Part shown: positions 514 to 59,912 of the stretch, in pieces | How the letters are laid out: every line of letters begins with the position of its first letter | How positions within the stretch are numbered: the first letter of the stretch is position 1 | Assembly (NCBI GenBank): GCA_047495785.1 | Contig: JBLDXI010000013.1 | Span: 3,534,001-3,598,000, forward strand | Length of the DNA: 64,000 nucleotides | Reading direction: 5' to 3' | From: Lepidodermella squamata | Lineage: Eukaryota; Animalia; Gastrotricha | Program-made: the position numbers and the translations under genes | The notes under the pieces: generated by a model | The model's database searches: none | Told to the model about the DNA's origin: nothing | Seen by the model: the letters and a program-made list of their open reading frames with translations, nothing else

Positions 514-1549
514 ACAATTGTGTACTTAAACAACTCGGTATCTAGCAAATTTGATATTCCATCTGGAGTGCCACAGGGCTCCGTCCTTGGACCCTTGCTG
601 TTCGTTGTGTACTTGCTATTCACTGATGACTGTATAAGGACTTCTTTAACTAAGTACTTCGCCGACGACACTAAGATCTATAATAAGATATCTTGTGTGG
701 AAGATTGTCACAGTCTTCAAGCTGATTTGAACAATATCATCGAATGGTTTGCCGACAATGGGCTTAACATTAATAGCCAAAAATGTTTTGTTCTCCGCCT
801 CAACGGCAAGAAATCTGCTGAAGTTGCTAATTTCAAGTACTCAATAAATGGTCACGAGATCGAGTTTGTTAAATCGATCCGAGACCTCGGAATTGAGGTA
901 GACGAGAATCTAAATTTTAAATCGCACTGCTCTAAAATTATTGCCAAGTGCAACAGGATTTCGGGATTCATTTTGCGAACTTTCAAATCGAATAGTCTAC
1001 GACTTAAGGCTTTTAATGTCTATGTAATGCCACACCTCGACTATGCTTCCACTGTGTATTCTCCATATCTGCTAACAGTAATCAGTCGGCTCGAATCAGT
1101 TCTGCATAATTTCCTGAAAAGGATGACAGGTTACAGGGTGACTGACTACAAAGTCCTACTCCAAATGTTTAGCATGAAAACTCTCGAAAATAGACGTTGT
1201 CAACGTGACTTGATACTAATGTTTAAATTATATCGTGGTTTTGTTGATGTTGATTTTGGTTTATTTTTTAACAAATCCAGCAACAAATATGCTGACACGC
1301 ACAGGCTCTCATTGCCTATGTGCCACAGAGACTGCTTTAAGTTCTCTTTTCTTAGAAGGTATGTAATATTATGGAACAAGCTGCCTTTAGACATTGTTAA
1401 TGGCTCTTTAGCTAATTTTAAATTGTTTGTTGATAATTTGGATAATACGAAGTTTTTGATATCTACAGTGAGGCGCCTTTGATTGCTAATAATCCTTGAG
1501 ATTGATTGCAAGCCGGTATAAAATAAATAAAAATAAAATAAAATAAACA
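514..1549 (+). mobile_element. 5'-truncated CR1/L2-type non-LTR retrotransposon (RT C-terminal half, 3' UTR, (TAAAA)n tail)
   Basis: ORF 520-1482 has SGVPQGSVLGP, YFADD, RDLG and R..ILWN.LP motifs; (TAAAA)n tail at about 1518-1547; possible TAAACA duplication at 508-513 and 1544-1549. Confidence 0.9.
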
Positions 1550-41311: not shown

Positions 41312-41679
41312 CTTGGTTTTTTTAATTTTGCTAATTCGCACACAAAAAATCGCCATTTGAATCATGAATTATGACAAATAATTTGTGAGCGGGTTTCGTT
41401 CATCGTTCATGATTCAAATGGCTTTGCGACCGTTTTTTGCAATAGCTGAATTTTGAGCATAAAAAATGAACAATGAATCACGCATGAATGTGTATTTTAC
41501 ACACGAGTTTGTGAACCGCACTTCAGAAATGACTAATTTCTTTTTGGCGCAAAATAAAATAAAATATCTACCTTAAAAATTGAACAAAAAATGCCAATTT
41601 GGCGCAAATTTCTCATTTTTCATTTCACACATTTTCGTCCTCGTTGTAACTTGTTTCAAAACTCTTCAAACTCATCATC

Positions 41680-42838
41680 ATGGCTTCGAACCATCGTTGC
41701 TTGCGCCACAAACAAGTCCGATGCACCCAGTGCTTGTAAGTTTTGAACAAACAAATTCCCTTAGACCCTTGCAAGCCTTTTTTGTTTCCTAGGATCGATG
41801 ATATGGAATTCCCCGCGTCGCCTCAGCAGGAAGAACAACCCCGCGGCCGAACTTCCGCTTCAGCCAACAAGCCAACCGCCTCGAAAGCTGCGTCTGGCCG
41901 TTCGTCAAGCTCTGGCCGCAAAAAGATGACGTCATCCTCGACTGAACCCTACAACCCCTTGCTCAACGCCCCGGCTCGCCACGCTCCAGGCGCTCATCAT
42001 CATGAAGATCACCACGAAGACCCGTTTAACACGAGTCTGGAATTGATCGCCCAGGCCATCAAGTCTCGACCAAGCAGTTCGAGGAAGAAATCCCCGGCAG
42101 CAAGGCAACAGGGCGCTAGTTCGAGCGAAATGACATGGGCGCCGAGAAAGGGCGCGAGAAACAACGCCGAGCCTCGAACTGCCCAAGAAACGCCGTTGCA
42201 TGAGCAGAATGAAGTCGCCGCTGGGTACGACTGGGCTTCAGTTGATTCAAGCAGCGCGAAGAAGAAATCGCCGTCGCAACGCGCCAAGAGCTGGGCGCCG
42301 GCCAAGAGTCCGACAAGGAAGAGCACCCGAAGCCGGTCGAAGTCGAAGTCGCGGAAAGAAACGCCGTTGAATGAGCAGAGGGACGATTCGGCGATTGCGG
42401 GGCTGAGCTGGAACTCGGCTGCTTCATCCGAGGGCCCTTTTGTTACGCCGGTGAGCGCTAAGAAGCGACCATCGCGACGCAGTTCGCCGAAAAAACGTAA
42501 CCAACCTCAGAAAGATGAGCAAGCTACTGATCCAGTTCTTTCGCGTTTCACCTTCCAGCCTCATGTCGTGCCTAGGTAAGTTCTTCAAAAGAATTGTTTT
42601 TTTATCGAAAACTATTTTTTTGTTTTCCAGTAATGTGCGGCGAAGTCTGTTTGCTGAGCCCACGAGGGAGGACGTGATCGAAGAGTTGGACGCGGCTATG
42701 GGTGGGATGGAATTGAATGATAGCGCTGAAAGTGGTTACGTGGAACCAGTGGCTCAACAACAGCCCGCTCGAAGGCAGTCACGCGGTAATACTCGAAGCC
42801 GAAGCAAGAGCCGCAGCAAGAGCGGCGGCAGGCGCTAA
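41680..42838 (+). CDS. CHCC-knuckle disordered basic protein 1, 348 aa (exons 41680-41735, 41793-42575, 42631-42838)
   Basis: MASNHRCLRHKQVRCTQCL; S/R/K/P-rich body; ends SRSKSRSKSGGRR; GT-AG junctions close the frame. Confidence 0.8.
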
Positions 42839-43193
42839 ATAAACGAGGACGAATACTACCACCTGTGATGAATCACTGTGATCTCGCGAGATTTACCGTC
42901 GAAATAAAAACTCGGAATTTTTAATCACTTGTTTTCGTCTTGATTCAGTTCTAAAGCCTACTTGGCGACGTCACTGGGTTGCGCTATTAGAGGGATGGGT
43001 AAGCGTGGGCATGTGTGCTCAATTTCGGGCCCATTGCGCGGGTTTCGCCGGTTGGGTCAAAATTAAGTGGACTTTTACGGGTAACACTTCAATTCGAATT
43101 TTTAACAAAATTTGGGCCACGTTTTTCTAAGTAAATTAACAATCACAGTGTTACTTTCGGTTTTTATACTAAATAAGCCATATTTTTTAAATA

Positions 43194-43635
43194 CCGTAGT
43201 TACCGAAATATAAGCCCCCACTCATCGTTTAGAAGCCTGTCTCGATTAGAAGCCTAGGTAAATTGAAATTCGACGATGCGTAGTCCTATCTCGAATAGTA
43301 GCCTAGGCTACTACGGCGCGTGTGCTCTGCTGCGCTGAACGGTATTTAAAAACGAAAAATTCGTTAAGATATGCAATAATCTGCGATTTACGATGATTTT
43401 AGTTAAAGCATTCCTTATTATTCCTAATTTTCATGCAGCTATTAGACGACATAGCTAATAACTAATAATGAAAACTTTGATGAGTTTTGAGATTGAAAGA
43501 CAGAATGTGAAGTCAGGTCTACGTTGCATAAGCCTATTTCAAATAGAAGCCTAGTCTTGAATAGAAGCCTACTTTTCCCCATTTTTAGAGGTATCATTTT
43601 TGTATAAGCCCGGGTTAGTATTTCGGTAACTACGG
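43194..43635. mobile_element. Tc1/pogo-type MITE
   Basis: TIR CCGTAGTTACCGAAATA; TA TSD; internal TAGAAGCCT repeats. Confidence 0.88.
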
Positions 43636-44557
43636 TAATTTAAATAATTTATAATATTTTCGCCTAGATTTCAACCAAATTTCGTGGGCAATGAATCAAT
43701 TAGTTGAGAAACGTTCGTCTTTACCCGACACATAAGATGGCAAAAATATGGGGGACGGCGCGATTCTTTTATAATGGCGATATCAGCAGTTCTGCATCCG
43801 GTACTTAACATCTCTTGAGTATACGGTAGGCGGAGTGCGCGATTCTTGAACTTCAAAACGCGCGGAAAGCTGAAATCTGATCTGAATATACTGACTCTTG
43901 AAAACGTTTTCAGAGCGACTGTTTTCAGTGATATCAGCGAAGGGGGATGTTAGTGACCTTCATGGGAGCTCCTTGAGGATTTGCTTTCCCTTTTTATACA
44001 TTATAGATAATGATGAAAAAGTGGTTATGACTGGACTAACATAGGCGCTATTTTTTTAGGCCCAGTGCCATTACTGGACCCCATACCAAACCCAGCGAAT
44101 CAATTTTTTAGGGCGTCTTATATAAGTAGCGCTAAACCGACGGGGGTACATTGATTAGGGAAATCTATACTTCTGATCAGATGTTATTTGGTCGATGCTC
44201 TTATTCTGCTTGTACCCTCAGCGATCAGTTCAAATAAATTGCTATTTAGGTACACCGCACGATGTCCCCAAGTGCATTGAGTAGCTTCAGCTTCACCACG
44301 CAAGACTACTATAAATGTAGTTGCTCATTCCGAGTTATTCCTTGCCAAAGCCATCACCAGGTGTCACATATATGTATTAAAACACTGCAGCTTATTAACG
44401 ATGCGAAGCGCGATGATTATCGATCGAGTGACACCGTGCTAGTTCTATTATCCTATACTTTGTCTGAGTTGTCTGCGTTCTGGAAAAATGCCCTGCCACG
44501 CATAACTCAATTTTTTTCATTCTTTCGATCATATCAATCGGTCATTGTAGCATTATT

Positions 44558-45967
44558 ATGCCTCGTAAATCAATTCCCGAGGAGGATAAATTGCGCCGAG
44601 TCGAGTTTTGCCGCGTATGTTCTATGCTTTTAAGACGGAATTATTCCAACTTTTTTCCTACAGGTGTGTGGCATCAAAGTGCCGCGGCGAAAGTTGTACC
44701 AGCCGAAAATATGCTTCGCTTGCCAGAAATTTTTCAGCCGCAATGTGGCGTATCTCGACGAGATGAAGTGCATCGGTGGTACTAATAACTGCAAAATTGA
44801 GCCGAAAATTCGCCGCCTGTGCGGACGATGCCGCGTGGAGCGATGCATTGAAGCTGGAATGCAAAGTATGGCAGCTTCACTTTGTGATTTATTTCCACAA
44901 TTATTACGTTAATTTACAGGCAAAGTCGCTATTGAGGTTAAGCGTAACTCTTCAACTTCAACCAAACTTCAAATTGCTGTAACGGATTCTTCGGATAGTT
45001 GTTCGTCAACGTCAGCTTCTTTGCACTTCGAGCCGGCAATCCATGGAGCTTCTGAGGTTGAAAGGGCTCTACTTACATCGACCCATGCAGTCACCCTTCT
45101 TATAGGGCTCGAATCTGTAAGATTTTACATTGATTATAGATACAGCTATTTTACTAAATTATTTCTATCAGTTACCCTTAAAAGTGTATAACGGACCGAT
45201 TGACGAGCGTCTAGTTCAAGAATTAAGTGTGAAGCAGATAGCTCAAATAAACAGCATAGGCGATCAATTTGTTGGCTTCCTGCAAGGTTTGAAGTCATAG
45301 TCTATTTTAATTCGAGTTTAAAGTTTTAACCGTAAACTCGTTTCAGATGCATTTGGCTTTGGTGACATCGAGAAATCGACAGTGATATCAACGAGTCTTC
45401 TAACCGTCATCACGACTTTCTGCGCCATGCCATCGAATTCTTTCAAGTATCAAGTTAACCCACAAACGCTGAATCTATTAACAAAAATGTGCCCCGGTCT
45501 AGATGTTAGTTTTGGGCAGTTTTTAAATATTTTACTCTATTTTTGCACGTGTTTTCAGGAGGCGGCAAAAGACATTGCTGGTCTTGGAAGGATTCTCGAA
45601 GAATGGAAACCGAATTTTCTCGAATCCGCGATTCTTTTTATGCTTCTTGCTTTCAATCGTGAGCATATCGTTTCTTCCAAATTAATCGATAATCTATACT
45701 TTTATTCATTTATTAGCGAACGTCGCGGGTATCAGCCATCCAATGGCGAATATTCGCAGGCGATTTGAAATGGCGTTGAACATGGTTGAATCTAAGCAGA
45801 GATGCTTCGAGGGGCGAATTTCGACTCCGTACTTTGTTCGAACACTTCGCATGCTAGATCGCATTAATGTGATTGTAAAAGCGGCTATTACAGCTGCGTG
45901 GGAGAAAGCCAGGGACGAATTCAACGAACAGTCAGTTAAAACTGTTGACAAATTCGTCCGTGAATAA
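44558..45967 (+). CDS. Divergent nuclear hormone receptor (C4 zinc-finger DBD + degenerate LBD-like region)
   Basis: CRVC-x14-CFACQKFFSR..C-x6-C-x9-CGRCRVERCIEAGM; downstream exons FVGFLQ.AFGF.DI, EW.P...ESAILFMLLAFN. Confidence 0.85.
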
Positions 45968-47627
45968 TAGCATATTAGATTATACAATCGTAGTTTTGTC
46001 TTATATCAATGGAATAAACTTTTTACCATGCTTATAAACACTCTTTTAACTTCAAATTTTCTTCATGAGCCAAACGAACGTGAGTTAGACTGGTGCGAAA
46101 ATGTCGGTATTCTCTGAATCCCAGCAAAATCTCTGGAACCCGAGCTTCCTTTTCAGCTTCGTTTTTACCTTGACTTACACTGCTTCAATTTCAAAATTAT
46201 TTCCGATGATTTCCGATATTTCCGATGATGAGCTTTGATTTCAAACTTCAGAAATCATCATCATCATCATTTGATCAGAAACGTCAGAAAAAGGATGCGT
46301 GCGTTTTGTATATAAAAGGACTTTTTTATAATCCTATTTTAGCTTTAGATTACCTGCCAGACAGCAGAAACGCATTGAACCAAAATAAGAAAATCAAAAG
46401 TTACGCACGGTCAGGTATTTGTTGAGTTGAAACTAAAAATATCTCACGCGCGCCGCGCGGAACTATTTTAGCTCAAAGCTTGGATTGAAATAGCTAAAAA
46501 TAAAAAGTGTAACTCGGACAGACGACAGACTAAGACAGTTTTAATAGTTGTAAAAATATGAATATTCAGAAATCTGTTGCCACCAGCGTCTTCGGTATAT
46601 GAAATTTTACCGAATCCACGAGAAACCCGAGAAAAAATATTAAAATTGAGCGAGTATGCAATTTGGGCCAGAAATTCAAAATTTTATGCACACCCGTGAC
46701 CTTGAAACGGATGTAAACAGGTCTAAATCCGAGCTATTCAACGACGCTAACGATATCGGTCCCGTGTAATAATTCGGTGTAGGTATACGTTAAATAATGA
46801 CCTCGAGGTCAGCGCCCTGTCGGAAATCCGTCGACCGAGTTTTAGAGTTGATGACACGATTTTAGCCATTTCTCCCTAAATCGGGCTATGACTTGGGCCC
46901 CCAACTAATTGCAACAAATTGGACCAGATTTATCATCAAATTGTTTTACACATGCTAACATGTTTTGGAATAATAATACACTATTATTTCTCAATTACAA
47001 ATTAAATAAATTATCGAAAATTATCGAATTTGCGTTTTCCGTATAGTTCGTAGAGTTCAAGAAGTTTAAGGAATTGACTTCTAATGATGACAATAATGAA
47101 AATACGGAATGCGTCTGTATAATAACTTCTGCCTGACCCTGTTTATATTTACCCAGTTTATTATTTGTTTATTATTTGTATGGAACTTTAATCGGACTAT
47201 TAATTTGACTTTAATTTAACCTATTACTTTTGTTTGATATACTTGCATACTTTCAGCTTGACGAAAAATAAACACTGCGAGCGTTATAAAACTGTCGTTT
47301 TCACCTACATTTCGGCGTGGGCTAAAACGTGTATAGGCACGTGTACGGTCGAAAATAAATATCGAAACATAACCTAAGAAATCTAAATACCGATGTAATA
47401 GCCTCCTCGCAGTTCCGAGTTTTTTCAGGTGTTGACGCCGGCGCAGTATCTAATGTATCGCAGTTGAAATGTCTTCACTAAGGGGGTTGTCAACTTAGCG
47501 GAGGTTGCTGAACCCCTGGCGAGTGAGAAATCTCTCTGAAAAAACTGCAGCTGATTAAACTGAAGTTATCCATTTAAGATGCGGGCAGCTCGCTATATTT
47601 TTGAGATATTTTTGAGATCGCCAGGTC

Positions 47628-49474
47628 ATGGCCTATCTCTTCGTTTTAGCTGCGTGCCTGGTCGCTGGCACTCAGGCTGATAATATTCCTTATCCTAATG
47701 TCACCATCACAGGTAAGCAATATTTCACTATGTACCGACTCACATAATTTCACAAGAATTCTTATTTCAGGTGGCTATATCTGCTCTTGGAGCACAAACT
47801 GGGCTAAATTTTGCTGCTTGAAGGGTACAATCATCGGTGAACCCACGATAACTAAGGACGCCAATGGCCAGTGGTCTACGCCCCAGTGCTCATGTCCCGT
47901 AGAACAAACCACAACCCCGGCTCCCACACAGCCAACTCAGCCCCCCACCCAGGCTCCATATCCTAATATCACTCTCCCAGGTATGAGCAAGATTCTACTT
48001 CCAGTTCGCAATTTTAAAAGAAGTAATATTCCAGGGGCTTATATCTGCTCTTGGAGCTCGAACTGGGCTAAATTTTGTTGCTTGAAGGGTACAATCATCG
48101 GTGAACCCACGATAACAAAGGACGCTAATGGCAAGTGGTCTACCCCGCAGTGCTCCTGTCCTGTAGAACAAACCACAACGCCGGCTCCCACAACTCCAAC
48201 TCAGCCCGCCACCCAGGCTCCATATCCCAATATCACTCTACCAGGTACATACGCACGATTTCACTTCTAACTCGCAATTTAATGCAACTAATACTCCAGG
48301 GGCTTATATCTGCTCTTGGAGCTCGAATTGGGCTAAATTCTGTTGCTTGGAGGGTAACATCACCGGCGAACCCACGATAACAAAGGACGCTAATGGCCAG
48401 TGGTCTACCCCCCAGTGCTCATGCCAGGCTCACTCGAAGTGCGGCCCTCAGCTGACCCCGACAGCTCCTTTCACCGTACCGGCCAGGGGCGTAAGTACTT
48501 GCCGATATTTGCCCGTAACCTGAGATTCATTTTGCGCTATCTCTGAATAAGTCTCAATGTAAGGGCAACATCACTGGCCCTAAAACTCGCTGCTATGATG
48601 ATGTAGCTGACGAAATTTTCCCAATCTCTATCCAAGAGGTTCTCGATCGCCACAACTGCTGGCGCAGTAAGTTAATCATATCGCATTGTGCTTCCTTTAT
48701 TAATTTCAACAAAATATCACCCAGGTCTCGTCGACCCCCCAGCAAAGAACCTCAGCATGCTCCAATGGGACCCTGATCTCGCCATCGTAGCCGAACGGTA
48801 AGGTCCTTCATTCGTTAAACGTCCGATGTCCAAGCTTGTTCATTTTCTTGAACTAGCTGGGCTGCACAGTGCTACGAAGACGGCAATAAGCCTCACGACC
48901 CAAACGAGGATCGCTCTCTGAAGGAGTTCCGCTCCACCCCTGGCGAGTACTACGATGTTGGCCAGAACATGTGTCTTGCCAGTTGGAACCGCTCCTGGTC
49001 CAGCTGCATCGACTCATGGGTAAGTTTTGAACAATAGCTCCGCCTCGGTAGTTGACTTTCCTGAAAAAATTACAGGCCGCGGAACAGAATAATTTCCAAT
49101 ACAACGTGGGGTCAATAAACGGCGGTGCGATCGGACATTACACTCAGCGTATGATTTCCGTTTTTTTTCGAGCCCATGTAATTACTGTATTTTGTTAATA
49201 GTCATTTCGGAAAGGAGTCGATTTGTCGGGTGAGTTTTATTGAAGCCAGATAATTATCAGGTGTTATATTGTACATTTTGGCGCAGCTGTGGCTGGGCTT
49301 ACTGCAAGGGCCGAACCTTTTCATACGTCCAGGTAAGCGAAAGACTGCTTTTGAGCGAGTTATAACTCATTAATTTCACGCTATAAGGTTTGCAACTACG
49401 GTCCTGCTGGTAATATGAATGGGGAAAGCATTGGTCAGGTTAATGGAATTATCACGCCCTACACCAAGGCTTAA
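47628..49474 (+). CDS. Secreted CAP/SCP protein with three N-terminal Cys/Trp modules, copy 1
   Basis: VLDRHNCWR, PPAKNL..LQWDPDLA..AERWAAQC, VGQN, GHYTQ, FVGCG, VCNYGPAGN. Confidence 0.9.
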
Positions 49475-49812
49475 ATAGGCCGAAAAATACTGGGCTATTA
49501 TGGACAAGCGGTGCTGGGTTGATCAGAGTTAAATTAGGCGAGAAATCCAAGATTAATAAGGAAAAGTAAACAAACATATCTTTGCATTGTTTAATTTTGC
49601 GTTTTTTGGCGTGTGAACATCTTTGGAAAAGGAATGTCGCGAGATATGAGGATAAATTGGTGATTTTTATTGCTGGTCACAAGCTAAACATCGCTGGGAA
49701 AATAAAAGAAAAAAATCCGCCTAAAATATTAAAACATTAACATAATGTACGTATCGATGTCGACAATCATCAGAACCCTTCGAAACTCGTTCAGATCACA
49801 GCCAGTACGGAA

Positions 49813-50354
49813 ATGGACAAGCGTTTTCGTTGCGAAAATTGCAGGCTAGTAAGATCAAACAATTAAAAATCTATGTCTTAATTGCGACTTATGGCTTATG
49901 GCGCAGTTTATTATTTTAAATATTTTCATAAGTTATCCCTTTTTTCTCATTCAGAGTTCTTATTGATAGTCCTCGGGATGAAAGAGGCAATGCTCCAACG
50001 GTTATTCGTCGTCACAAACCCAATCCGCCGGAGCAAAATCATCCTATTGACCTTCGCATGCATATCAGGCCCAGCTGGGACAACCCTTTTGATCTATCCA
50101 TGGTCCCTCGCCGCGATCGTCCCGTCGATATGTCGATGGAAGCCGATTGCAAGCAGGGTGCGAAAGTTCCTCGCGAAATTGAAGAAAGTATGTAGCGTTT
50201 TTTATTTACCCATTCAATTTATCAAGTTGACTTCTATACAGAATTTGCGATTCCTGACGAGCACGAATCTGACGAATCTTCTTATAGATCCGTCGAATTA
50301 GAGTCAGAGCTAGCTTCGGACTACGAAAGCTCCACTTCATCTAAAGCGGGTTGA
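49813..50354 (+). CDS. Small disordered protein with half knuckle (RCENC), 125 aa (exons 49813-49844, 49955-50187, 50242-50354)
   Basis: Frame closes with a GC donor in phase 2 one codon after CxxC, the same position as in 41680 and 51294; AATAAA downstream. Confidence 0.55.
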
Positions 50355-50526
50355 ACTTTGTACCATTGTACCATTGAAGTCAGGGAACGTCGGGGAATTC
50401 AAGCGCATCGATCTATTTTGCCAATAAACCCGATTTAATGCTCATTTTTTTTATAATTTTTGAATAATATTGACCTTTGACCATTTTCCTATCCCCGGTT
50501 ACACATTGGCAAAACTTGATGAATTA

Positions 50527-50892
50527 CAGCGTGTCCCAGAAGTTGCGTATCAATCAATTAAATTGGCAAATTTTCGTAGAAAAAGCAACCAATTTTTTCA
50601 AATTAAACCTAACGAGAGAATTATAGATGATTTAACCCAAGAATTAGAAATAATCCGGAAAACCCCGATGGTAACTGGTTCGGTAATTTTTGGTATTTTA
50701 CCCGATTGGACGAAATTTCTCCAGAATTTTTTAATACCATTAAGAATTTACATATTCAATTACTATTCTCGTGATTTTTTTAATTTTTCCAAACATTTTC
50801 TGGCCATGAGATGTGACTTCGTGTCTCATCGTATCGTTTCTTAAGGCTTCTCCGTGTATTTTCTTTGCCTGGGTTACAAATGGGACACGCTG
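50527..50892. mobile_element. Tc1/mariner-type MITE
   Basis: TA-CAGCGTGTCCCA...TGGGACACGCTG-TA. Confidence 0.8.
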
Positions 50893-51293
50893 TAGACAGA
50901 AAAATAGTCTCGCAATTCTACCAATCGTGACCGAATTCGACCAAAATTCGGGATTACCCGGACCTACCGTCCTTAAACTAAAGAAAAGTGTCTTCTCCAG
51001 CTATTTACTAAATATGTTTAATAAAATTGAGATTTATCAATTTCGTCCGGAATTTGATAGCAATTACCGCAAATGGGAGCGTAATTCATTGCTGAAACTT
51101 TCGAATTTCATTTTGAAAATTGAAGCTGTCTATATAATTTGCTGGACACAGGTGTTCATTTTGCTATAAATAAAAATTATCAAGAAATAATATTCAAAAA
51201 ATCCAACTTAATTATTTCGAATCCGAATGCTTTCTTTTCGATTGTTAATCATTTTTCTCATTTCGCGAATTTATAAACTCTTCAAACTTCGAA

Positions 51294-52220
51294 ATGGACC
51301 ATCCTTGCCAGCTTCACGGCATCGTTAACTGCAGTTCCTGCCAGTAAGTCGAGCCCAATTAAAGCATGCGCAAAAGGGTTAAACTTGTTGATTACTTTTA
51401 TTTAGTCATTCTCGCCGGCGAAATGCATCTGGCTCAGAAAAACCAGAGAGCAGCAAAGGCCACAAACGGCAACGTCGGCCCTCGGAGTCGTCTTCGCCCG
51501 TCGATCTGAGTGGATCCAAAGTTCGGCGTAGCTTGACGGGAGCCTTCAACTCTAGCTCACACGAAGACGATCGTCACCTAAGATCAGGGCACCATCAAGA
51601 TCAAGGTCACGCCGCAGGTCATCGGCCGAGGTCACTGGGCGCTTCAAATTATGAGACAATAGATGACTCCACGGCTAGTAATCAACCGATGGATGAATCT
51701 TCCAGGCCTAACCGCGTGATCAAAAAAGCCGTCCGAAAATCGAAACACGTGGCACCCGAAGATCCCTGGGTGATGAGGCAGCCTCGATCGAACGATGGCG
51801 CTTGGGGCTTCGTCGATACGCCGCCGAGTTCTGTTACAAGTGGAGGATCTAGCCAGAAGTGGAATCCTATGGCGGCTCGGGGTGCGACATCGGACGGTTC
51901 TTTCGATTTCGGCAACAGCCAGTTTAATGATTTCAGCTCGATGCGCAGGAGCACGCCGAATGAGTCGTCTCTTGCTAGGTCGATGCCATCTACCTCTAAG
52001 TAGGTTATATTTTCATTTTTTGAGGTCGGGCTCATTATTATTTTCATATAGTGCGAGCCGGAGATTGGCATTTCCAACACCGACGAAAATCGATGACCTA
52101 ACGGCGGGCTTCCGAAATTTGAATGCCCATCAAGATTCGTCCTCGGATAGCGATGATCAAGACAGCGGAATAAACAATTCGAAAAGCAGGACTAAGAAGC
52201 CAGCACCGAAGCGGCGATAA
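51294..52220 (+). CDS. CHCC-knuckle disordered basic protein 2, 270 aa (exons 51294-51343, 51406-51999, 52052-52220)
   Basis: MDHPCQLHGIVNCSSC; both introns phase 2 at positions equivalent to gene 41680; ends KSRTKKPAPKRR. Confidence 0.8.
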
Positions 52221-52470
52221 GCGATGATCTCATTCTGATGCCGGTCATTTCCAATAAAATGAAATTATCAGAGATTGATGATTTTTTTTATATAAAACCC
52301 AGAAATGAGCGTAGAAATGATCCAAGAACCTTAATTTCATTTATTGATCCTTATTAATTTCTGGAAGTAGGACTTTCCTAGTAGGATTAAAATCTGATTT
52401 CTGATCAGCTCGGCACCGTTTATTTATACTTGCAGAAATATGGATTGTTTTTCCTTCATTTTCATGCAAT

Positions 52471-54276
52471 TCAAGCCAAAGTGTAGGGCATGAGCTGTTC
52501 ATTAACTTGGCCAGGTATGTTAGATGCATCCAGATTACCCGAAGGGCCATAGTTGCAAACCTTAAGAGTAAAAGCGTGTTAATTCATGGAATAGGTGTTT
52601 TCCTTACCTGGAGGAATGGCAAACGGCGATTCTTGCAGTAAGCCCAGCCACAGCTGCGAAATGTGAAAATTGGAAATCCCCAAATTACCTGGCTTCTATG
52701 AAACTCACCCGACAAATCGGGTCCTTTGAGCTACGACTAAGTGAAATTATTTCAATAGAATCGACTGTCCGCATGATAACTTTAAACAATCATACCCTGA
52801 GTGTAATGTCCGACATCACCTGTAGCGCCTTCCTTTTTACCCTTGCCATATTCGAAATCCTTCTGCTCATTGGCCTAGATCAAAATGGGATAAAGTAAAC
52901 TAGCGAGGCATAAACCTTGAAAATTACCCACGAGTCGATGCATTTGGACAAGGATTGGTTGTAAGAGGCAGAGCAGATGTTCTGGCCAGCACTGTAGTAC
53001 TCGCCAGGGGTGGAACGGAATTCCTTCAGAGAGCGGTCCTCATTTGGGTCGTGCCCCTCACGGCACTGAGCAGCCCAGCTAATTCAAACATATAGAGATC
53101 GGACCTAAGAGTTTTACATTTGGAAGGGACGCTACCGCTCGGCTAGAATGGCGAGCTCGGGATCCCACTGGAGCTTGCCGAGGTTCTTGGCCGGAGGGTC
53201 GACGATACCTGGGTTTTAATTGGAAATCAAAAGATTCACAATGCGTTATGATAAACTCACTACGCCAGCAGTTGTGCCGGTCGAGAACCTCTTGGATAGA
53301 GACGCCATACAGTTCGTCAGCAATATCGTCATAGCAGCGAGTTTTAGGGCCAGTGATGTTGCCCTTACATTGAGACTTTCAGCAAAGATAACGTACATTT
53401 CATTTTGGAGATAGAATTGCGGTATACTTACGCCCCTAGCCGGCGTTGAGTAAGGAGCAGTCGGAATGATCTCTGGGCCGCATTTCGAGCTGTAATTTTC
53501 GTCAGTAATAGGGCATGAATACTGGGGAGCAGACCACTGGCCATTGGCGTCCTGCACGATTCTAGCGTTGCCGATGACTTTTCCATTTGAGCAACAGAAC
53601 TCAGCCCAGTTCCCGCCCCAAGAGCACAAGTAGGACCCTAAAATATGCAAATGATAAGATGGCGAGAATTCACAGAGACGTCATGGACCTTGGACACTGG
53701 TTGTGACATTAGGTTTAGCCAGTGGCGCAGCGGTGTTTTGGTTCGCAGAGCATGAGCACTGAGGCGTGGACCACTGGCCACTGGCGTCTTTCGTTATCGT
53801 GGGGTCGCCAGTCATGTTACCATTCAAGCAGCAAAATTTAGCCGACGTCGTGCCCCAGGAGCAGATGTAAGCCCCTGAAATATGAGTTTGATTGATATGG
53901 AAATCTGACAGAGAACGCTTTCTCACCTGCGACAGTGACGTTGGGCTTGACAAGAGCTGCAGCGGTCACAGGTTGAGTTGTGGCTTGATCTACGGCGCAT
54001 GAGAACTTGGGAGTAGACCACTGGCCGTTAGTGTCTTGCCAAATCCTGGGGTCGCCAGTGAGGTTACCCTTCAAGCAGCAGAAATTAGCCCAGTTTAACA
54101 GCGTGCCGTTTACATTCGAGTTGCCCCAAGAGCAGAGATAGGTACCTGAAATACTAGCTACGGTAAAATTGCGAAATTCTGGTGAAATACTGCTCACCTG
54201 CAGGAGCAGTCACATTGGGCTTTTGAGCCTGAGCGGCAGCGACGATGCACGCAGCGATAGCAAAGATAAAGGCCAT
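52471..54276 (-). CDS. Secreted CAP/SCP protein with three N-terminal Cys/Trp modules, copy 2 (inverted paralog)
   Basis: Same exon structure and motifs as 47628-49474; about 400 bp of upstream sequence also homologous (47220-47630 versus 54280-54700). Confidence 0.9.
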
Positions 54277-55518
54277 GATTTAGCGTAAATAAGCATTTCA
54301 ATCCAGCGAGCGACCCGCTTGTTAAATAGATATAACATTAGTTTAATCAGCTGCAGTTTTCAAGAGAGTTTCGCCAGGGTTCAGCAACCTCCGCTAAGTT
54401 GACAACCTAATTGTTAAAGACATCTTAACAGCGGCATTTGATATCGGTTTTTGCGGCGGCGTCAACACCTGAAAAAACTCGGAACTGCGAGGAGGGGAAA
54501 ACGGGTCGATTACATCGGAACGTAGATTTCGTAGATTATGTTTCGATATTTATTTTCAACCGCACATGTGCCTACACGTTTTAGCCCACGCCGAAATGTG
54601 AGTGAGTGAAAAATAACAGTTTTATAAAGCGCGAGTGTTTATTTTTCGTCAGGCTGAAATCTGAAGTTAAGCTAGTACATCAAACAAAACTAAAAGGTTA
54701 ACGGAGATGAGTTTGACCTTCTAGTTTAACAAATCATGGTCACTGTCCACACTTGGGCTTTTTATAACCATTTCAGGCAAGATGGTTTTTCAGGCTACAA
54801 CGAAGCCAAAGCCGAGACCTCTATAACGAAACCGGTCGGAGGCCAGTCGGATCTCTAAGAAACCAGGACCCGCGGAACCTAGAGGCAGATAATAGTTTGA
54901 TATAATCACATTACGTTCAACTTATTTCTCATTACTGGATTACAAATCTGGCACTTGTTCCTCTCGGCGTGACCCACATCTCGACGCTTGCTGCCGATCA
55001 AACAGGGAAGGCAAATTAGAATATTTGAGCACATTTTATACACATCTTGCACAGTCTTGCATGCCTGAGTCAAAAATATCCAAGCTCATTTCGAGTTTAT
55101 AGACAATTTATCAAATTTGGCCTGCCGAAAAAGTTCATAATCAAAAGAAAAGATAGGTATAAAATAAAAAAAAACCTCTTATGCAGCGAATGAATACGCG
55201 ATGGCTTACGTCTCTTCATTCAACGCTAGAGGGCGTATGATCGAACTAATAAGGACAATTATTCATAGAATTAACAAAAATGTTAGTGCAACCAGATATA
55301 CCTTATGTAATTTCAAAAGGTAAAATGCCGATACCGACAGCACGAGCAACCTCTCACGAGTTGATGGCGTTAAGACAGCGGATCCTTGGGCTTTTAGCGT
55401 CATGTACGATGCGCACTCGTTGAGGGCTTTGTTGATATACGACACACGCGCGAGTACTCCCTTAAGGTTGTTGCACTGGGACTTAGTTTATTCCTCACGT
55501 TTAACCACAAACGAGAAA

Positions 55519-58327
55519 ATGAACCTCCGATTTTGTTTGTATCTGGTGCTGCTCTCACCGTCCTATACCCTTGCTTGCAGTTCCGATGTCCAATCAGCCC
55601 TTCTGGTAAGGAAGAATCAAATCCCTGTTTCGGCTGTACCACATTTCTTCCCTATGCTTTTTCAGCCAACCAAGCAACCAGCCATTGGGGGATCGAATCA
55701 ACGTATAAGCGGATACTTACGCTGCGTTCAACAGCGAACTGGCAGTCGCGTATGTCGCCAGACTGAATGCTCAGCGAACGAGATTAAAGTTTGTTTCAAG
55801 ACCTGAATCCGAATCTATCTATCTCCCATTTTCCACAGTACCCAATTAGGGTGTTTGATTCTCAAGCAGAATGCGAGGCGATAAGTGCGTTCAAATTATG
55901 CTACGACTACGACATTTCCGCCCAGGAACCAACAAATCGCGGCTCTTGCATAATCGATACAAAGCCATGCGACGTCCCAACAAAGTTCGAAACTCCAATT
56001 AGGTTCGATGACGCGACGAGCTGTTCGAACATTGCTGTGACCGCTTGGATTCGGTGCATTACAAATCAGGGCGGCACACCGGGTCGTGTATGCCGGCCTC
56101 AAGCATACGGATGCTCGTCAGAGTTCAAAGAAATCCAGTCACCGGACGCGACACAGGCCCGATCTTTGAACAGTAACAACGTTTTTGCCGTAGTTTCAAC
56201 TAGCATCGAGCAATGTCATAGCATGACGGTGAGTTATTTCCGAAAATGATTGTGACAAAATATTGGTATGTCTTGCAAAATTAAGCCGCAAGTGAAATGC
56301 TTCGACATTGCAACTAACGGTTTGACATGCGTGGATGATTTCATCGGCTGCCGATCTACTACGGCGATTCGAGTCGCATCCCACATGTTATTCGCGAATT
56401 CCGAAGCCTGTGAAGCCTACTCGATGGTAAGTCAGACTATTCCCAACAGTTTGCCTCAACAAAGAGGTTTTCCTTTCCCAGCCGCAATGGATTAGATGCG
56501 TCGACAATGCCAATAGTGCTTTGGCTAAATGTGTGCCTTATGATGTCAATAACCAGCGAGACTGTCCTTCCACATTGAACAGCCATCAGTTGCCAAAGGG
56601 AACGCTATTCGGTTCTTTAGAGCAGTGCACTACTTTCCGTGAGGTAAGAAGTCGTTAATCATGGTTGTTATCGAAACTCTTTCATTGGACGAATAGCCTT
56701 ATGTGCGGTGTTGGGACGTTGTGAACAACGTTGCAGCTAACACGCTTTGCGTCCCTCAATCGATCGGTTGCCAGAGTCAGAATGCAGTTCAAATACCATC
56801 CACAGTATTCACCGACGCCCAAGCCTGCGGCGGAGCACAATACGTTCACGTAAGTCCTCTTTTGCTGGTTTTGATTTGGCCAAGTTAAGCCTCTCCTGTC
56901 CAGTCCGTGTGGATGCGCTGTGTTGGAACTGGTGATCAGGCCATGGTTGTTAGATGTCGACCCTATGACGCGCAGAACTTTGCCGCTTGTCCGCGCAACG
57001 AGATGCAGTTACCGGACGGAGAAACGCGCTTTGGTTCACTAGAATCTTGCACGGCTGCTACTGTTGTACGTTTTCAAATAGATTCGGCGCTATCTTCATA
57101 GCAAGATTCCTTCATTTGACAGACTGAGTATGTGCTATGTTTCGATCTCAATTCAATGACTACGTCTTGCCGAGTTGCAAATGGTGGAACTTGTCCTGCT
57201 GGCTACGTAAGTTCGAAATCTAAGGGAGAATTTCAGAAACCTCCATAGTAGTGGGGGAATTTAAGATTGACAAAGTCCTTTCATGACCAAATGTAAAACA
57301 GCAGGGTTTGCAATAATTTGTCCTAATTTCTCGTAGAAACTAACTCCATCGGATGGTACTCGTTTCTACAGCTTCGAAAAGTGCAACTCATGGCCTGGAC
57401 TTGTGAGTTCATTCGTTTTTCCTCTTTTCCGTCGTTGAAGTCACGTTTCAGCGGTTTATCCGATGTTTGCAAGCACCGAATCGAAACTGCATCCCAGAGA
57501 TGTTCCAACGCGGCGAATCACGAGGCTGTAAAGCTCTGTCCGCTGACCCTACAAAAGTCTGGCAAAACTCTCCGCCCGATGTAACGTATAGCTCCGTGCA
57601 GAACTGCCTCGCAGCGGAACCTCACGTCGCCTGCTACTCGGCCACGCTCAATCTGGTTCAATGCCAACCAGACACGCTTGGCTGCTCGCGGCTCGGCAAC
57701 GATTTCGAAGTGCTATCCTCATCTCCCATGTTCACCTCCCTCGGCTCTTGCCTTCTCTACTCGCCACCAGCTGTATTGCGATGCACAAACCGTCTTAGTG
57801 GAGCCGTAGCATGCCGACCGTCCTCAGTAGGGTGCCTAACAGCCTCAGGCGAGTATGCTTCATCTGCCGTGTTGTACTCGAGTTCTCTCGAATGCGCGAA
57901 TGTCATCGAGTTCTACGCCTGCTACGACACATTGCGGCCAACGGCACCTGTGACATGCCGCGCGTCACGTGACAGCTGCCCGGCTGGTTCTGTGCCTCTC
58001 CGCTTGCCTCAAACCGCCGATTTGCGAACATTCAGCGATTTGGCTACATGTTCAGCTTTCGATAGGGTTAGTAATTGCACTATTGCTTCATATTCGAGGA
58101 ATCCCATCGAATTTCATTAAGGGTGTCTGGCATCGGTGCCAAGCTGCTGATGGCTCGCTGACTTGTCGGCCTCTTGACGCTGAAATTGATCCGACCGATC
58201 CAACTCGTACGGCCAAGTGTCGACGAGATGAAATTGTAAGTTTCCGATGAAATTACAAAAACAATTATAAAACTGTTTTCAATTATAGCCAAGTACGTCT
58301 TCATACACGACTTCATCTTGCACTTGA
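55519..58327 (+). CDS. Secreted protein composed of about 13 tandem four-cysteine modules
   Basis: Signal peptide MNLRFCLYLVLL; spliced product repeats C-x7/15-C-x4/16-C-xn-[FY]-x-[SD]-x3-C. Confidence 0.75.
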
Positions 58328-58654
58328 TCAGTAAGAGAAAAAACGAGGGTTCGAAACTCCCGAAATTCGATTGAATCAACGTGAAGACTTCATAGATTTC
58401 AAAAAGTAGATTTCATTACTGTGCTGTATTGGTCAATAAATCAAGTAAATAAGAAGAATTTCGGAATCCTATGGGAGCTGGTTGCAGATAAGCTTGGTTT
58501 ACCCAGCGTTATATAAATGTTTAAAAATCCTTAAAAATTTCAAATCTTGAAATTCAAAAATTCGTAAAAAAATCCAACTCAAAATGTAGCTCAAAATGTA
58601 ATTATCCTTCGTAATGTGTAACTTTATTTGAATCGTTCGAAACTCCTTTGAAAA

Positions 58655-59181
58655 ATGTATTGCCAAAAACGCGACCGATCGACGTCGAGAAGCCGGCAGC
58701 AGGCAACGCCGGACAACGTTTACAGCTTCGACGAGATCAGGCAAGCGATGGAGAAGGCTGGAGAGCCAGTGAAAACAGTTGCTTATCCCAAGGTTGATAT
58801 GAAATCTGCAGACACTGAAACCGAAATGGCGAAGTACTACAACAATCGCGAGCCGATCACCACGCGCAAGTTAACATTTTCCAATAGCCAAGACACTCCG
58901 CAACCGATCGGTTCGACCATCAGCAGGTATGATGTTAGAATTACTAACAAATTTTCCTAATTTTTTTTCTATGATTTTCTAGTTATGCTCGTTCGCGGCT
59001 GCTAGACGATCTTTCCGCTTCGAGTCCTTCGAGCAGCTCCAGAAATATCACTCCAGATGACCTGAAAATGAATAAATTTACAGCTTCATCTTCGAACAGC
59101 CTTCCGCTAGCTACTCGCCGCAATCGATCTCGAAGCCGCAGTAAATCAAGAAAGCGATTTAGGTCAACTAAGAGAAATTGA
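58655..59181 (+). CDS. Disordered basic protein, 156 aa (exons 58655-58926, 58983-59181), knuckle-less family member
   Basis: Phase-2 intron before YARSRLLDDL; tail RSRSRSKSRKRF; AATAAA downstream. Confidence 0.7.
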
Positions 59182-59541
59182 AGACAAATTAGTGGAAAAT
59201 GGTCTCAAAGTTTCTCTTAAAGAAACAAATTGAGGATGGTAAATAAAATAAGCTTTCATGAAGTTATCAGTAATTTTGAAAGTCACTTTTATCATCCGGA
59301 GTTCAAGTCCGAAAACTGAACACTAATTTACCTGGCAGTGGAATTTCATTTTCAGTTTTTAGATTTTTTTCCGGAATAATTCTCAGTCGAGCGAAGAGGG
59401 CAAAAAATATATTTGAGCAGTTAATCATTAGGTAGCAAAATGTCGCGATAATTCAGAAATAAAAAATGCACCTTAATGGAATGATGAGCAATAATTGTAA
59501 AATTGGTTAAAATCGAGCACGGAATTTTTTTCAAACTCGAA

Positions 59542-59912
59542 ATGGCATCACAGCGTTGTCGCGATCATCGTTTGATTCATTGCTACCATTGCTCATGGGG
59601 CCGCGTCGATGTTGAAAAGTAAGTATGGCAAACCAAACACTTAGCCAATGAGGCTCGCTCATATTTTCCGTTTAAAGACCGCTCCAAGTTCAATGGCCTA
59701 GCAACATTCAAAATACAAATCGCCAAAATAAATCCGGCGAGCGGAACGCAGACAAGCAATTAGCTGGCAGTTCGGCTGAATCTTTCCAGGTCGACGACAT
59801 GGAAAAGCTGGCTCAGGTGCTGGAAAATTCAAGACAAATCCGCCCAATGCCTCGCAGGATTTTAAAATTGTCGCGACCGAGAATCAGCAGTCAGCCGAGT
59901 AAAGAAAATTAA
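59542..59912 (+). CDS. CHCC-knuckle small protein 3, 103 aa (exons 59542-59618, 59678-59912), absent from the ORF track
   Basis: MASQRCRDHRLIHCYHC; GTAAGT donor; frame closes; AATAAA at about 59957. Confidence 0.7.

What the first reader, a model, noticed from the sequence alone, without database searches (positions are those of the whole stretch)
41659..59912. Dispersed five-gene family: CxxH-x4-CxxC knuckle + disordered body + RxL/NES-like motifs + basic RS tail
Seen: five + strand genes with almost no alignable body sequence. 41680 (CLRHKQVRCTQC), 51294 (CQLHGIVNCSSC) and 59542 (CRDHRLIHCYHC) start with C-x2-H-x4-C-x2-C; 49813 keeps only CENC; 58655 lacks it. In 41680, 51294 and 49813 a phase-2 intron falls one codon after the last Cys. 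In 41680, 51294 and 58655 a phase-2 intron precedes RRSLF / RRLAF / RSRLL, then an acidic-hydrophobic stretch (EELDAAMGGMEL, DDLTAGFRNL), then a K/R/S tail. SP/TP-basic sites (SPTRK, SPKK, TPTK) and isolated Trp motifs are common. Established: RxL(x)F is the cyclin-docking Cy motif, L-x3-M-x2-M-x-L fits a CRM1 NES, [ST]PxK/R are CDK sites. Inference: a lineage-specific, fast-evolving family of shuttling, CDK-regulated nuclear or germline proteins (CKI-like, protamine-like or condensate scaffolds) held together only by short motifs. I do not recognise this knuckle spacing as a named domain.
Basis: partly seen in the sequence, partly recalled or inferred. Interest (0 to 1): 0.8.

Follow-up and report, generated by a model that had tools for sequence, protein, structure and literature searches.

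The report
Orphan zinc-knuckle disordered protein family
Four neighbouring genes, with a doubtful fifth, in an unidentified small-intron animal make mostly unstructured, basic proteins that share a tiny probable zinc-binding cap, a few short motifs and a common DNA motif just before the start codon, and have no relatives in any database searched. The family is real, but the proposed cell-cycle role is untested.

Summary
The observation largely holds.

- **Knuckle:** C-x2-H-x4-C-x2-C occurs three times in the six-frame translation of the 64 kb, against 0.12 expected. Each time it lies 4-6 residues after an ATG on the + strand (genes A 41680, B 51294, E 59542).
- **Shared gene features (new here):** all five genes carry TTC(G)AAACTY 12-34 nt before the ATG and AATAAA within 68 nt after the stop. 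All six canonical introns of A, B, D and E are phase 2.
- **Bodies:** they cannot be aligned. They are about 80% disorder-promoting residues and basic.
- **Relatives:** none in Pfam, PDB, three word searches, or one exhaustive search of 1.84 billion proteins.
- **Gene C is doubtful:** its CENC exon joins the coding frame only through a non-canonical GC donor.

The cell-cycle reading is weak.

- [ST]P and [ST]Px[KR] sites are at chance level.
- RxL(x)φ is only marginally enriched.
- A strict NES-like pattern at matching positions is shared only by A and B.
- The best shared short motif is φ-[DE]-[DE]-[L/M]: 5 hits in 4 genes against 0.13 expected.

Splicing and expression could not be confirmed.

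The scan has already noted similar knuckle/RxLF arrays on other pieces of this genome (s1-373993, s1-374171). I could not compare their sequences.

Verdict: a real orphan family of moderate interest, function inferred only.

The parts
41543..41608 (+). Two copies of TTTGGCGCAAA, which fits the E2F-site consensus, 137 and 82 nt upstream of gene A's ATG
   Evidence: The 11-mer occurs three times in the window and two of them are here. This is a lead only; the E2F consensus comes from general knowledge.
41665..41674 (+). Leader motif TTCAAACTCA of gene A, starting 15 nt before the ATG
   Evidence: TTCG?AAACT[CT] has 9 hits on the + strand of the window, and 5 of them precede these five ATGs.
41680..41735 (+). 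Gene A exon 1, the knuckle (C-x2-H-x4-C-x2-C), ending in a phase-2 GT donor
41793..42575 (+). Gene A exon 2, the disordered basic body. It holds a His/acid patch, one predicted helix, and an internal tandem duplication of about 55 aa (42133-42288 and 42289-42498).
   Evidence: mean pLDDT 50.6, one helix; duplication score 87 against 30 +/- 5 in shuffles.
42631..42838 (+). Gene A exon 3: RRSLF, then IEELDAAMGGM, then an RS/KS tail and the stop. AATAAA overlaps the stop.
49779..49788 (+). Leader motif TTCGAAACTC of gene C, starting 34 nt before the ATG
49813..49848 (+). Gene C candidate exon 1 (MDKRFRCENC..). It would end at 49844 with a GC donor (phase 2) or at 48848+1000=49848 with the GT donor (phase 0, wrong frame).
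49955..50187 (+). Gene C exon 2.
   Evidence: second-haplotype variants give 6 synonymous and 8 non-synonymous in this frame, and 0 synonymous of 12 in the overlapping hydrophobic frame.
50242..50354 (+). Gene C exon 3, an acidic Ser-rich tail with no basic tail, reached through a phase-1 intron. AATAAA follows about 68 nt after the stop.
51281..51290 (+). Leader motif TTCAAACTTC of gene B, starting 13 nt before the ATG. TTTCGCGA lies 33 nt before the ATG.
51294..51343 (+). Gene B exon 1, the knuckle, ending in a phase-2 GT donor
51406..51999 (+). Gene B exon 2, the disordered basic body, with a His-rich patch, three Trp and a second VRRSL
   Evidence: Contigs of run X2 lie on 51179-52222 but not on the flanks.
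52052..52220 (+). Gene B exon 3: RRLAF, then IDDLTAGFRNL, an acidic Ser stretch, a KKPAPKRR tail and the stop. AATAAA follows 33 nt later.
58636..58645 (+). Leader motif TTCGAAACTC of gene D, starting 19 nt before the ATG
58655..58926 (+). Gene D exon 1. It has no knuckle, contains RKLTF, and ends in a phase-2 donor.
58983..59181 (+). Gene D exon 2: RSRLLDDL, a Ser-rich stretch, an RSRSRSKSRKR tail and the stop. AATAAA follows 61 nt later.
   Evidence: (similarity to A exon 3, z 2.8).
59530..59539 (+). Leader motif TTCAAACTCG of gene E, starting 12 nt before the ATG
59542..59618 (+). Gene E exon 1, the knuckle plus 9 codons, ending in a phase-2 donor
   Evidence: Pfam and PDB gave no hit.
59678..59912 (+). 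Gene E exon 2: a predicted helix over VDDMEKLAQVLEN, then PRRILKL, ending SKEN and the stop. AATAAA follows 45 nt later.
   Evidence: (helix at residues 38-52, pLDDT 80-88).

Best explanation
**What it is.** A, B, D and E are diverged paralogues of one lineage-restricted gene family. C is a doubtful, possibly decaying fifth member. Each gene is its own transcription unit, and the conserved leader motif TTC(G)AAACTY just upstream of the ATG probably co-regulates them.

**The proteins (103-348 aa).** They are basic and almost wholly disordered. Only four things are kept:
1. A 12-residue N-terminal C-H-C-C cap with a conserved V/I two residues before the third ligand. It most likely binds one zinc ion (A, B, E).
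2. A φ-[DE]-[DE]-[L/M] segment that is predicted helical in E and has NES-like spacing in A and B.
3. An R-x-L-(x)-φ site.
4. A K/R/S tail that looks like a nuclear-import or nucleic-acid-binding signal.

**How it most likely works (inferred, not shown).** These are nuclear proteins that act through short docking motifs. The tail takes them to the nucleus or chromatin. The knuckle gives a small zinc-dependent contact. The last-exon motifs dock a partner. A cyclin's hydrophobic patch is the leading candidate, which would make them lineage-specific CDK substrates or inhibitors in the manner of Drosophila Z600/Frs or Roughex.

**My odds.** Real paralogous orphan family, about 0.9. Nuclear motif-bearing disordered proteins, about 0.5. 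Cyclin docking specifically, about 0.2.
For: - The knuckle occurs 3 times against 0.12 expected, always at an N-terminus on the + strand.
- The leader motif precedes all five ATGs; that is 5 of the 9 + strand hits in 64 kb.
- AATAAA lies 0-68 nt after all five stops, against a background of 1.27 per kb.
- All six canonical introns of A, B, D and E are phase 2.
- A3-B3 and A3-D2 score above shuffles, z 2.8.
- φ[DE][DE][LM] gives 5 hits in 4 genes against 0.13 expected, P<0.0005. The pattern was defined after looking.
- A class-3 NES-like pattern sits at matching positions in A3 and B3; 0.14 and 0.03 are expected.
- The exons are 77-85% disorder-promoting residues with pI 10-12. AlphaFold gives coil except for one helix each.
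- No relatives were found anywhere.
- Two E2F-consensus sites lie upstream of A.
- Small CDK inhibitors exist in Drosophila: Z600/Frs and Rux bind CycB-Cdk1, and a cited 2007 study reports Frs binding the cyclin hydrophobic patch (PMC10670764).
- As leads only, earlier scan notes report similar arrays in this genome, one containing Cdc25.
Against: - There is no evidence for splicing or expression. Only contigs were available, and no junction-spanning contig was found.
- CDK-type sites are not enriched, and RxL is only marginally enriched.
- In E the motif order is reversed. D lacks the knuckle. C lacks the basic tail, the first ligand pair and a canonical in-frame donor.
- Zinc binding by four ligands within 12 residues is not shown. 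The only literature occurrence of this spacing is half of a two-zinc cross-brace finger, where the two pairs were modelled as holding different ions.
- No cell-cycle gene lies in this window.
- Short motifs in disordered proteins fit many readers: Aurora/PKA-type R-R-S-L, 14-3-3, β-TrCP-like DSG. The partner is therefore under-determined.
Confidence: 0.45

Rival explanations
1. These are nucleic-acid or chromatin-associated basic proteins, SR-like or similar to sperm nuclear proteins. The zinc knuckle and the RS/KS/KR tail would bind RNA or DNA, SRPK-type kinases would phosphorylate the tail, and the RxL and acidic motifs would be incidental.
For: - The exons have pI 10-12, and A and D end in RSRSKSR-type tails.
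- Knuckle plus basic tail resembles zinc-binding transition and protamine-type proteins and knuckle-bearing SR proteins (from general knowledge).
- The genes are fast-evolving, clustered and orphan, as reproductive chromatin proteins often are.
Against: - K+R is only 15-26%, with 6-15% acidic residues, far below protamine-like proteins.
- No RRM or other RNA-binding domain was found.
- The RS runs are only 2-3 dipeptides long.
- The acidic-hydrophobic motif is kept better than the tail sequence.
Confidence: 0.2
2. Only a 5' cassette is shared. A promoter, leader and knuckle first exon ending in a phase-2 donor was duplicated and joined to unrelated downstream bodies, so the 'family' is a mosaic and not a set of whole-gene paralogues.
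For: - The bodies cannot be aligned.
- E shares with A and B only the leader, the knuckle and the donor phase.
- Phase-2 symmetry would allow such joining.
Against: - A, B and D also share the last-exon layout: a phase-2 acceptor, then RRxL, φ-acid-acid-L and a basic tail, with z 2.8.
- D keeps the leader and the last exon but not the knuckle, which fits divergence better than cassette capture.
- φ[DE][DE][LM] is present in all four genes.
Confidence: 0.15
3. Some or all are not functional protein genes. They would be chance ORFs, non-coding transcripts or decaying pseudogenes, with likeness due to composition.
For: - There is no transcript evidence.
- C lacks a canonical in-frame donor and has two open overlapping frames.
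- Many motif claims are at chance level.
Against: - The probabilities for the knuckle, the leader motif and the poly(A) signal are very low under chance.
- The 260- and 197-codon exons are open, with canonical frame-preserving introns.
- The synonymous excess in C exon 2 is frame-specific.
- Contigs of run X2 lie on B's transcription unit and not on its flanks.
Confidence: 0.05

Closest known systems
Drosophila Frühstart (Z600) and Roughex, small lineage-restricted CDK inhibitors
   Same: They are small, with no conserved domain, and act through a short motif. Both are reported to bind CycB-Cdk1, and a cited 2007 study reports Frs binding the cyclin hydrophobic patch (PMC10670764). That they are disordered and fast-evolving is from general knowledge. 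This is the working analogy for an RxL-bearing orphan protein.
   Different: No sequence similarity was detected. Those proteins have no zinc knuckle. Cyclin binding by the proteins here is untested, and RxL is barely above chance.
Retroviral-type CCHC zinc knuckle (C-x2-C-x4-H-x4-C)
   Same: It is a very short, single-zinc, three-Cys-one-His module. It often sits next to basic disordered sequence.
   Different: The ligand order and spacing differ: here C-x2-H-x4-C-x2-C, 12 residues. Pfam gave no hit for E exon 1.
C-terminal cysteine-rich domain of piggyBac transposases
   Same: Its last two ligand pairs have exactly the spacing C-x2-H-x4-C-x2-C (PMC5861402).
   Different: There the motif is half of an eight-ligand cross-brace finger that binds two zinc ions. 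The first two pairs and all other similarity are absent here.
Knuckle/RxLF arrays noted earlier in this genome (s1-373993, s1-374171)
   Same: As described in those notes, they are small disordered orphan proteins with a Cys knuckle and a PRxLF-type motif. Gene E (knuckle plus PRRILKL) fits that description best.
   Different: One note places the Cys cluster at the C-terminus. This window holds no Cdc25.

Membership tests
zf-CCHC retroviral-type zinc knuckle | Spacing C-x2-C-x4-H-x4-C and a match to the Pfam model | tested here: not met
   The spacing is C-x2-H-x4-C-x2-C. Pfam gave no hit for E exon 1 at E up to 1. The A and B knuckle exons (18 and 16 aa) are below the tool's 20-residue minimum.
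Cyclin-docking (Cy/RxL) CDK inhibitors or substrates | An [RK]-x-L-(x)-[FLMP] site kept across members | tested here: inconclusive
   One site each in A3, B3, D1 and E2: 4 hits against 2.0 expected, P 0.13 for hits and 0.05 for genes. The positions are homologous only in A and B.
Cyclin-docking (Cy/RxL) CDK inhibitors or substrates | Enrichment of [ST]-P or [ST]-P-x-[KR] CDK sites | tested here: not met
   The counts equal those of residue shuffles in every exon, p 0.2-0.7.
Cyclin-docking (Cy/RxL) CDK inhibitors or substrates | Homology to the CDI domain of Cip/Kip proteins, or physical binding to a cyclin | tested here: not met
   No Pfam family matched any exon. Binding cannot be tested with these tools.
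CRM1-dependent leucine-rich NES | Spacing of four hydrophobic residues (classes 1a-3), kept in all members | tested here: inconclusive
   Present at matching positions in A3 and B3, where 0.14 and 0.03 are expected. Absent in D and C. In E only a chance-level match elsewhere.
piggyBac-type cross-brace cysteine-rich domain | Eight ligands: C-x2-C-x11-C-x2-C-x4-C-x2-H-x4-C-x2-C | tested here: not met
   Only the last four ligands are present, and the motif starts 4-6 residues after the Met.
SR / RS-domain proteins | An RRM plus a long RS dipeptide domain | tested here: not met
   No RRM was found. RS/KS runs of a few dipeptides occur only in A and D.
Same-genome knuckle/RxLF orphan family (earlier scan notes) | An N-terminal Cys knuckle, one Thr-Pro site, and a C-terminal P-R-x-L-F | not testable with these tools
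   Only the notes' summaries were visible. E has PRRILKL, A has RRSLF and B has RRLAF. No sequence comparison was possible.

The most novel reading that the evidence does not exclude
The 12-residue C-x2-H-x4-C-x2-C cap is a new minimal zinc module. It would mark a large, genome-wide, lineage-specific family of cyclin-docking regulators, including the arrays noted elsewhere in this genome and one around Cdc25. These would be co-regulated through the TTC(G)AAACTY leader and E2F-type sites, forming a private, rapidly diversifying layer of cell-cycle or meiotic control.
Probability: 0.12. Interest if true: 0.75.

Novelty: new variant of a known kind. Interest (0 to 1): 0.42.

Why it matters
If the family is expressed, it shows how a gene family can keep its identity through a 12-residue metal-binding cap, a few short motifs, intron phases and a non-coding leader motif while the rest of the protein changes beyond recognition. 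That is a useful test case for motif-based rather than alignment-based homology.

If the members really dock on cyclins, the animal would have a private, expanding set of CDK regulators. Two concrete things can be tested directly: a knuckle spacing I found described only as half of a two-zinc transposase finger, and the conserved leader motif.

Tried and rejected
**Searches that found nothing**
- Pfam on all exons of 20 aa or more gave only sub-threshold noise.
- PDB sequence search of E exon 1 and A exon 3.
- Word-index searches with A exon 2, B exon 2 and E exon 2.
- Exhaustive phmmer of A exon 2: 0 hits at E up to 0.001.
- ESM Atlas: no usable hit.
- Rfam on the whole window.

**Read evidence**
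- Only contigs were available. X1 is DNA with two haplotypes.
- X2 (type guessed as RNA) has contigs of 57-165 nt. They cover B's unit but span no junction.

**Pairwise and other checks**
- Pairwise BLASTP of the bodies was not significant.
- A likeness between E's helix, a helix in A exon 2 and a stretch of D exon 1 (SF/PF followed by φ-E-x-φ-A-Q) did not reach significance.
- The extra leader-motif hit at 46240 has no gene behind it.
- No further shared upstream 7-mers stood out.
- An upstream ATG (49745) joined to the GT donor of C gives a stop at the best acceptor.
- D-box, PP1 RVxF and 14-3-3 readings of the RRxL site were considered by eye. They do not fit all members.
- The organism could not be identified.


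Full report
**Setting.** The window looks like a gene-dense animal genome. Introns are 52-62 nt with T-rich AG acceptors, G+C is about 41%, and there are no tRNA or Rfam hits. I could not name the organism, and earlier scan notes call it an unidentified invertebrate. The neighbours are mostly orphan Cys-rich secreted-type genes, plus PAN, Sushi, VWA, a septin-like GTPase and a reverse-transcriptase fragment. No cell-cycle gene lies in the window.

**Gene models.**

| Gene | Exons | Protein | Introns |
|---|---|---|---|
| A | 41680-41735 / 41793-42575 / 42631-42838 | 348 aa | both GT-AG, phase 2 |
| B | 51294-51343 / 51406-51999 / 52052-52220 | 270 aa | both GT-AG, phase 2 |
| D | 58655-58926 / 58983-59181 | 156 aa | phase 2 |
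| E | 59542-59618 / 59678-59912 | 103 aa | phase 2 |
| C | ATG 49813; exon 2 49955-50187; exon 3 50242-50354 | unresolved | first intron unresolved, second phase 1 |

With phase 2 at roughly a quarter of introns in most genomes (general knowledge), six of six has a chance of about 2e-4.

**Is it more than chance?**
- C..H....C..C occurs exactly three times in the six-frame translation of all 64 kb. Block shuffles give a mean of 0.12 and a maximum of 2. All three lie on the + strand, 4-6 residues after an ATG.
- Beyond the four ligands, a V/I is kept two residues before the third ligand in all three (V, V, I).
- AATAAA follows all five stops within 68 nt, against a background of 1.27 per kb.
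- The coding bodies have diverged beyond alignment, yet a 9-10 nt non-coding motif stays at a fixed place. The motif is therefore probably a selected cis-element of the promoter or 5' UTR.

**Relatedness of the proteins.**
- The bodies do not align: BLASTP E 0.2-0.28, and local-alignment z near 0 against residue shuffles.
- Only the last exons show marginal signal: A3-B3 z 2.8, A3-D2 z 2.8.
- Immediately after the phase-2 acceptor, A and B share RR(S)L(A)F, then P-T-[RK], then I-[DE]-[DE]-L-x-A-x-φ-x-x-φ. The last element matches a class-3 NES spacing at matching positions, where 0.14 and 0.03 are expected.
- The tetrapeptide φ-[DE]-[DE]-[L/M] occurs five times in four genes (A twice, B, D, E under the strict pattern) against 0.13 expected, P<0.0005. 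The pattern was chosen after seeing the data.
- In E this segment is the one confidently predicted helix, residues 38-52 of exon 2, pLDDT 80-88.
- A exon 2 is predicted as coil: mean pLDDT 50.6 with a single helix, from a single sequence, so this is weak evidence.
- The exons are 77-85% disorder-promoting residues with pI 10-12, except in C.
- A also contains an internal tandem duplication of about 55 aa (42133-42288 and 42289-42498), scoring 87 against 30 +/- 5. This explains its repeated W-A-P, ETPL-x-EQ and AKK-x-PS elements.

**Gene C.**
- The only GT donor after the CENC codons (49849, GTAAGA) is phase 0. It joins to an overlapping hydrophobic frame that is also open to a stop.
That is exactly where A and B have theirs, but in C it reads AG|GCTAGT.
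- Set against A (TGCTT|GTAAGT) and B (TGCCA|GTAAGT), C looks as if four bases (GCTA) sit in front of the old donor.
- C thus either uses a rare GC donor, has another first exon, or is decaying.
- It also lacks the first ligand pair and the basic tail. I count it as doubtful.

**The interpretation.**
- [ST]P and [ST]Px[KR] are no more frequent than in residue shuffles, p 0.2-0.7 in every exon. The sequence therefore gives no specific support for CDK regulation.
- RxL(x)φ occurs once per gene in A, B, D (RKLTF, in exon 1) and E: 4 hits against 2.0 expected, P 0.13 for hits and 0.05 for genes.
- The same residues fit other readers as well. VRRSL, in A exon 3 and again in B exon 2, fits basophilic Aurora/PKA-type sites, and B has a DSG-x3-S (general knowledge).
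- Two TTTGGCGCAAA elements upstream of A, a TTTCGCGA upstream of B and a TTTGGCG upstream of C fit the E2F consensus. The enrichment is weak.
- The analogy with small orphan CDK inhibitors is legitimate: Z600/Frs and Rux are reported to bind CycB-Cdk1, and a cited study reports Frs binding the cyclin hydrophobic patch (PMC10670764). It is only an analogy.

**The knuckle.** No Pfam or PDB match was found for E exon 1. The only paper holding the spacing string describes the piggyBac transposase cysteine-rich domain. There, C-x2-H-x4-C-x2-C is the second half of an eight-ligand cross-brace finger proposed to bind two zinc ions (PMC5861402). One zinc held by all four ligands is my inference. Zinc-bridged pairing of two chains is an alternative.

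**Absence of relatives.** There were no hits for A exon 2, B exon 2 or E exon 2 in the word-index search. There were none for A exon 2 in the exhaustive search of 1.84 billion representatives, and no usable Atlas hit. The window's own proteins were not found either, so this genome and probably its close kin are not in those collections. 'No relatives' therefore means none outside the immediate lineage.

**Expression.**
- Run X1 is DNA holding the locus as two haplotypes, at depth about 40-49 each and about 90 where they are merged.
- Run X2, from another organism label and with its RNA type only guessed, has near-identical short contigs over 51179-52222, which is B's unit. It has none in the flanks 50918-51178 and 52223-52300, and a dip in the bin that holds intron 2.
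- This is consistent with transcription of B, but no contig spans a junction.

**Earlier scan notes (leads, not evidence).** s1-373993 and s1-374171 describe other arrays of small disordered knuckle/RxLF orphan proteins on other pieces of this genome, one including Cdc25. The scan has therefore met this kind of family before. The present cluster may be a longer-bodied, dispersed branch of it, and E is the member most like those descriptions. I could not test this.

**Verdict.** This is a real, orphan, fast-diverging family of four genes plus one doubtful member. It is defined by a minimal probable zinc cap, a leader motif, phase-2 introns and a few short motifs. A nuclear, motif-mediated regulatory role is plausible. 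Cyclin docking is the leading guess but is weakly supported. The A and B knuckle exons are too short for the protein tools and were left out.

Noticed in passing
window 50550-50900: A very high-copy repeat lies between genes C and B. Summed contig depth reaches about 97,000 against about 90 for the flanks in run X1, with many variant copies and internal deletions. It is probably a MITE-like element.
   Followed up: no
window 43185-43644: A foldback or MITE-like element has 33-nt terminal inverted repeats (85% complementary, 394 nt apart). Inside are 4-5 copies of a TCGAATAGAAGCCTAG-like unit.
   Followed up: partly
window 47698-49480 (+) and 53246-54197 (-): A repeated Cys-rich module of about 60 aa (ICSW..NWAKFCCLKG..G.P.I.KDANGQWSTPQCSC) is unknown to Pfam. 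On the + strand it seems to be fused to a CAP/SCP-like part; GHYTQ and CNYGPAGN motifs were read by eye.
   Followed up: partly
window 55402-58120 (+): A second cluster of paralogous Cys-rich ORFs has no Pfam match. One of the extra TTCGAAACTC hits (55986) lies inside its coding sequence.
   Followed up: no
window 49957-50300: In gene C two overlapping frames stay open across exons 2 and 3. The canonical GT donor leads into the hydrophobic one, about 108 codons in all, but haplotype variants show no synonymous bias there.
   Followed up: yes
window 49700-51530: The sample is strongly heterozygous. A second haplotype differs by about 7-11% plus indels, including a 9-nt deletion in intron 1 of B and a 20-nt deletion at 50914.
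   Followed up: partly
window 42133-42498: Gene A carries an internal tandem duplication of about 55 aa, z about 11 against shuffles.
   Followed up: yes
window 520-1482: An ORF fragment of a non-LTR-type reverse transcriptase matches RVT_1 at E 8e-11.
   Followed up: no
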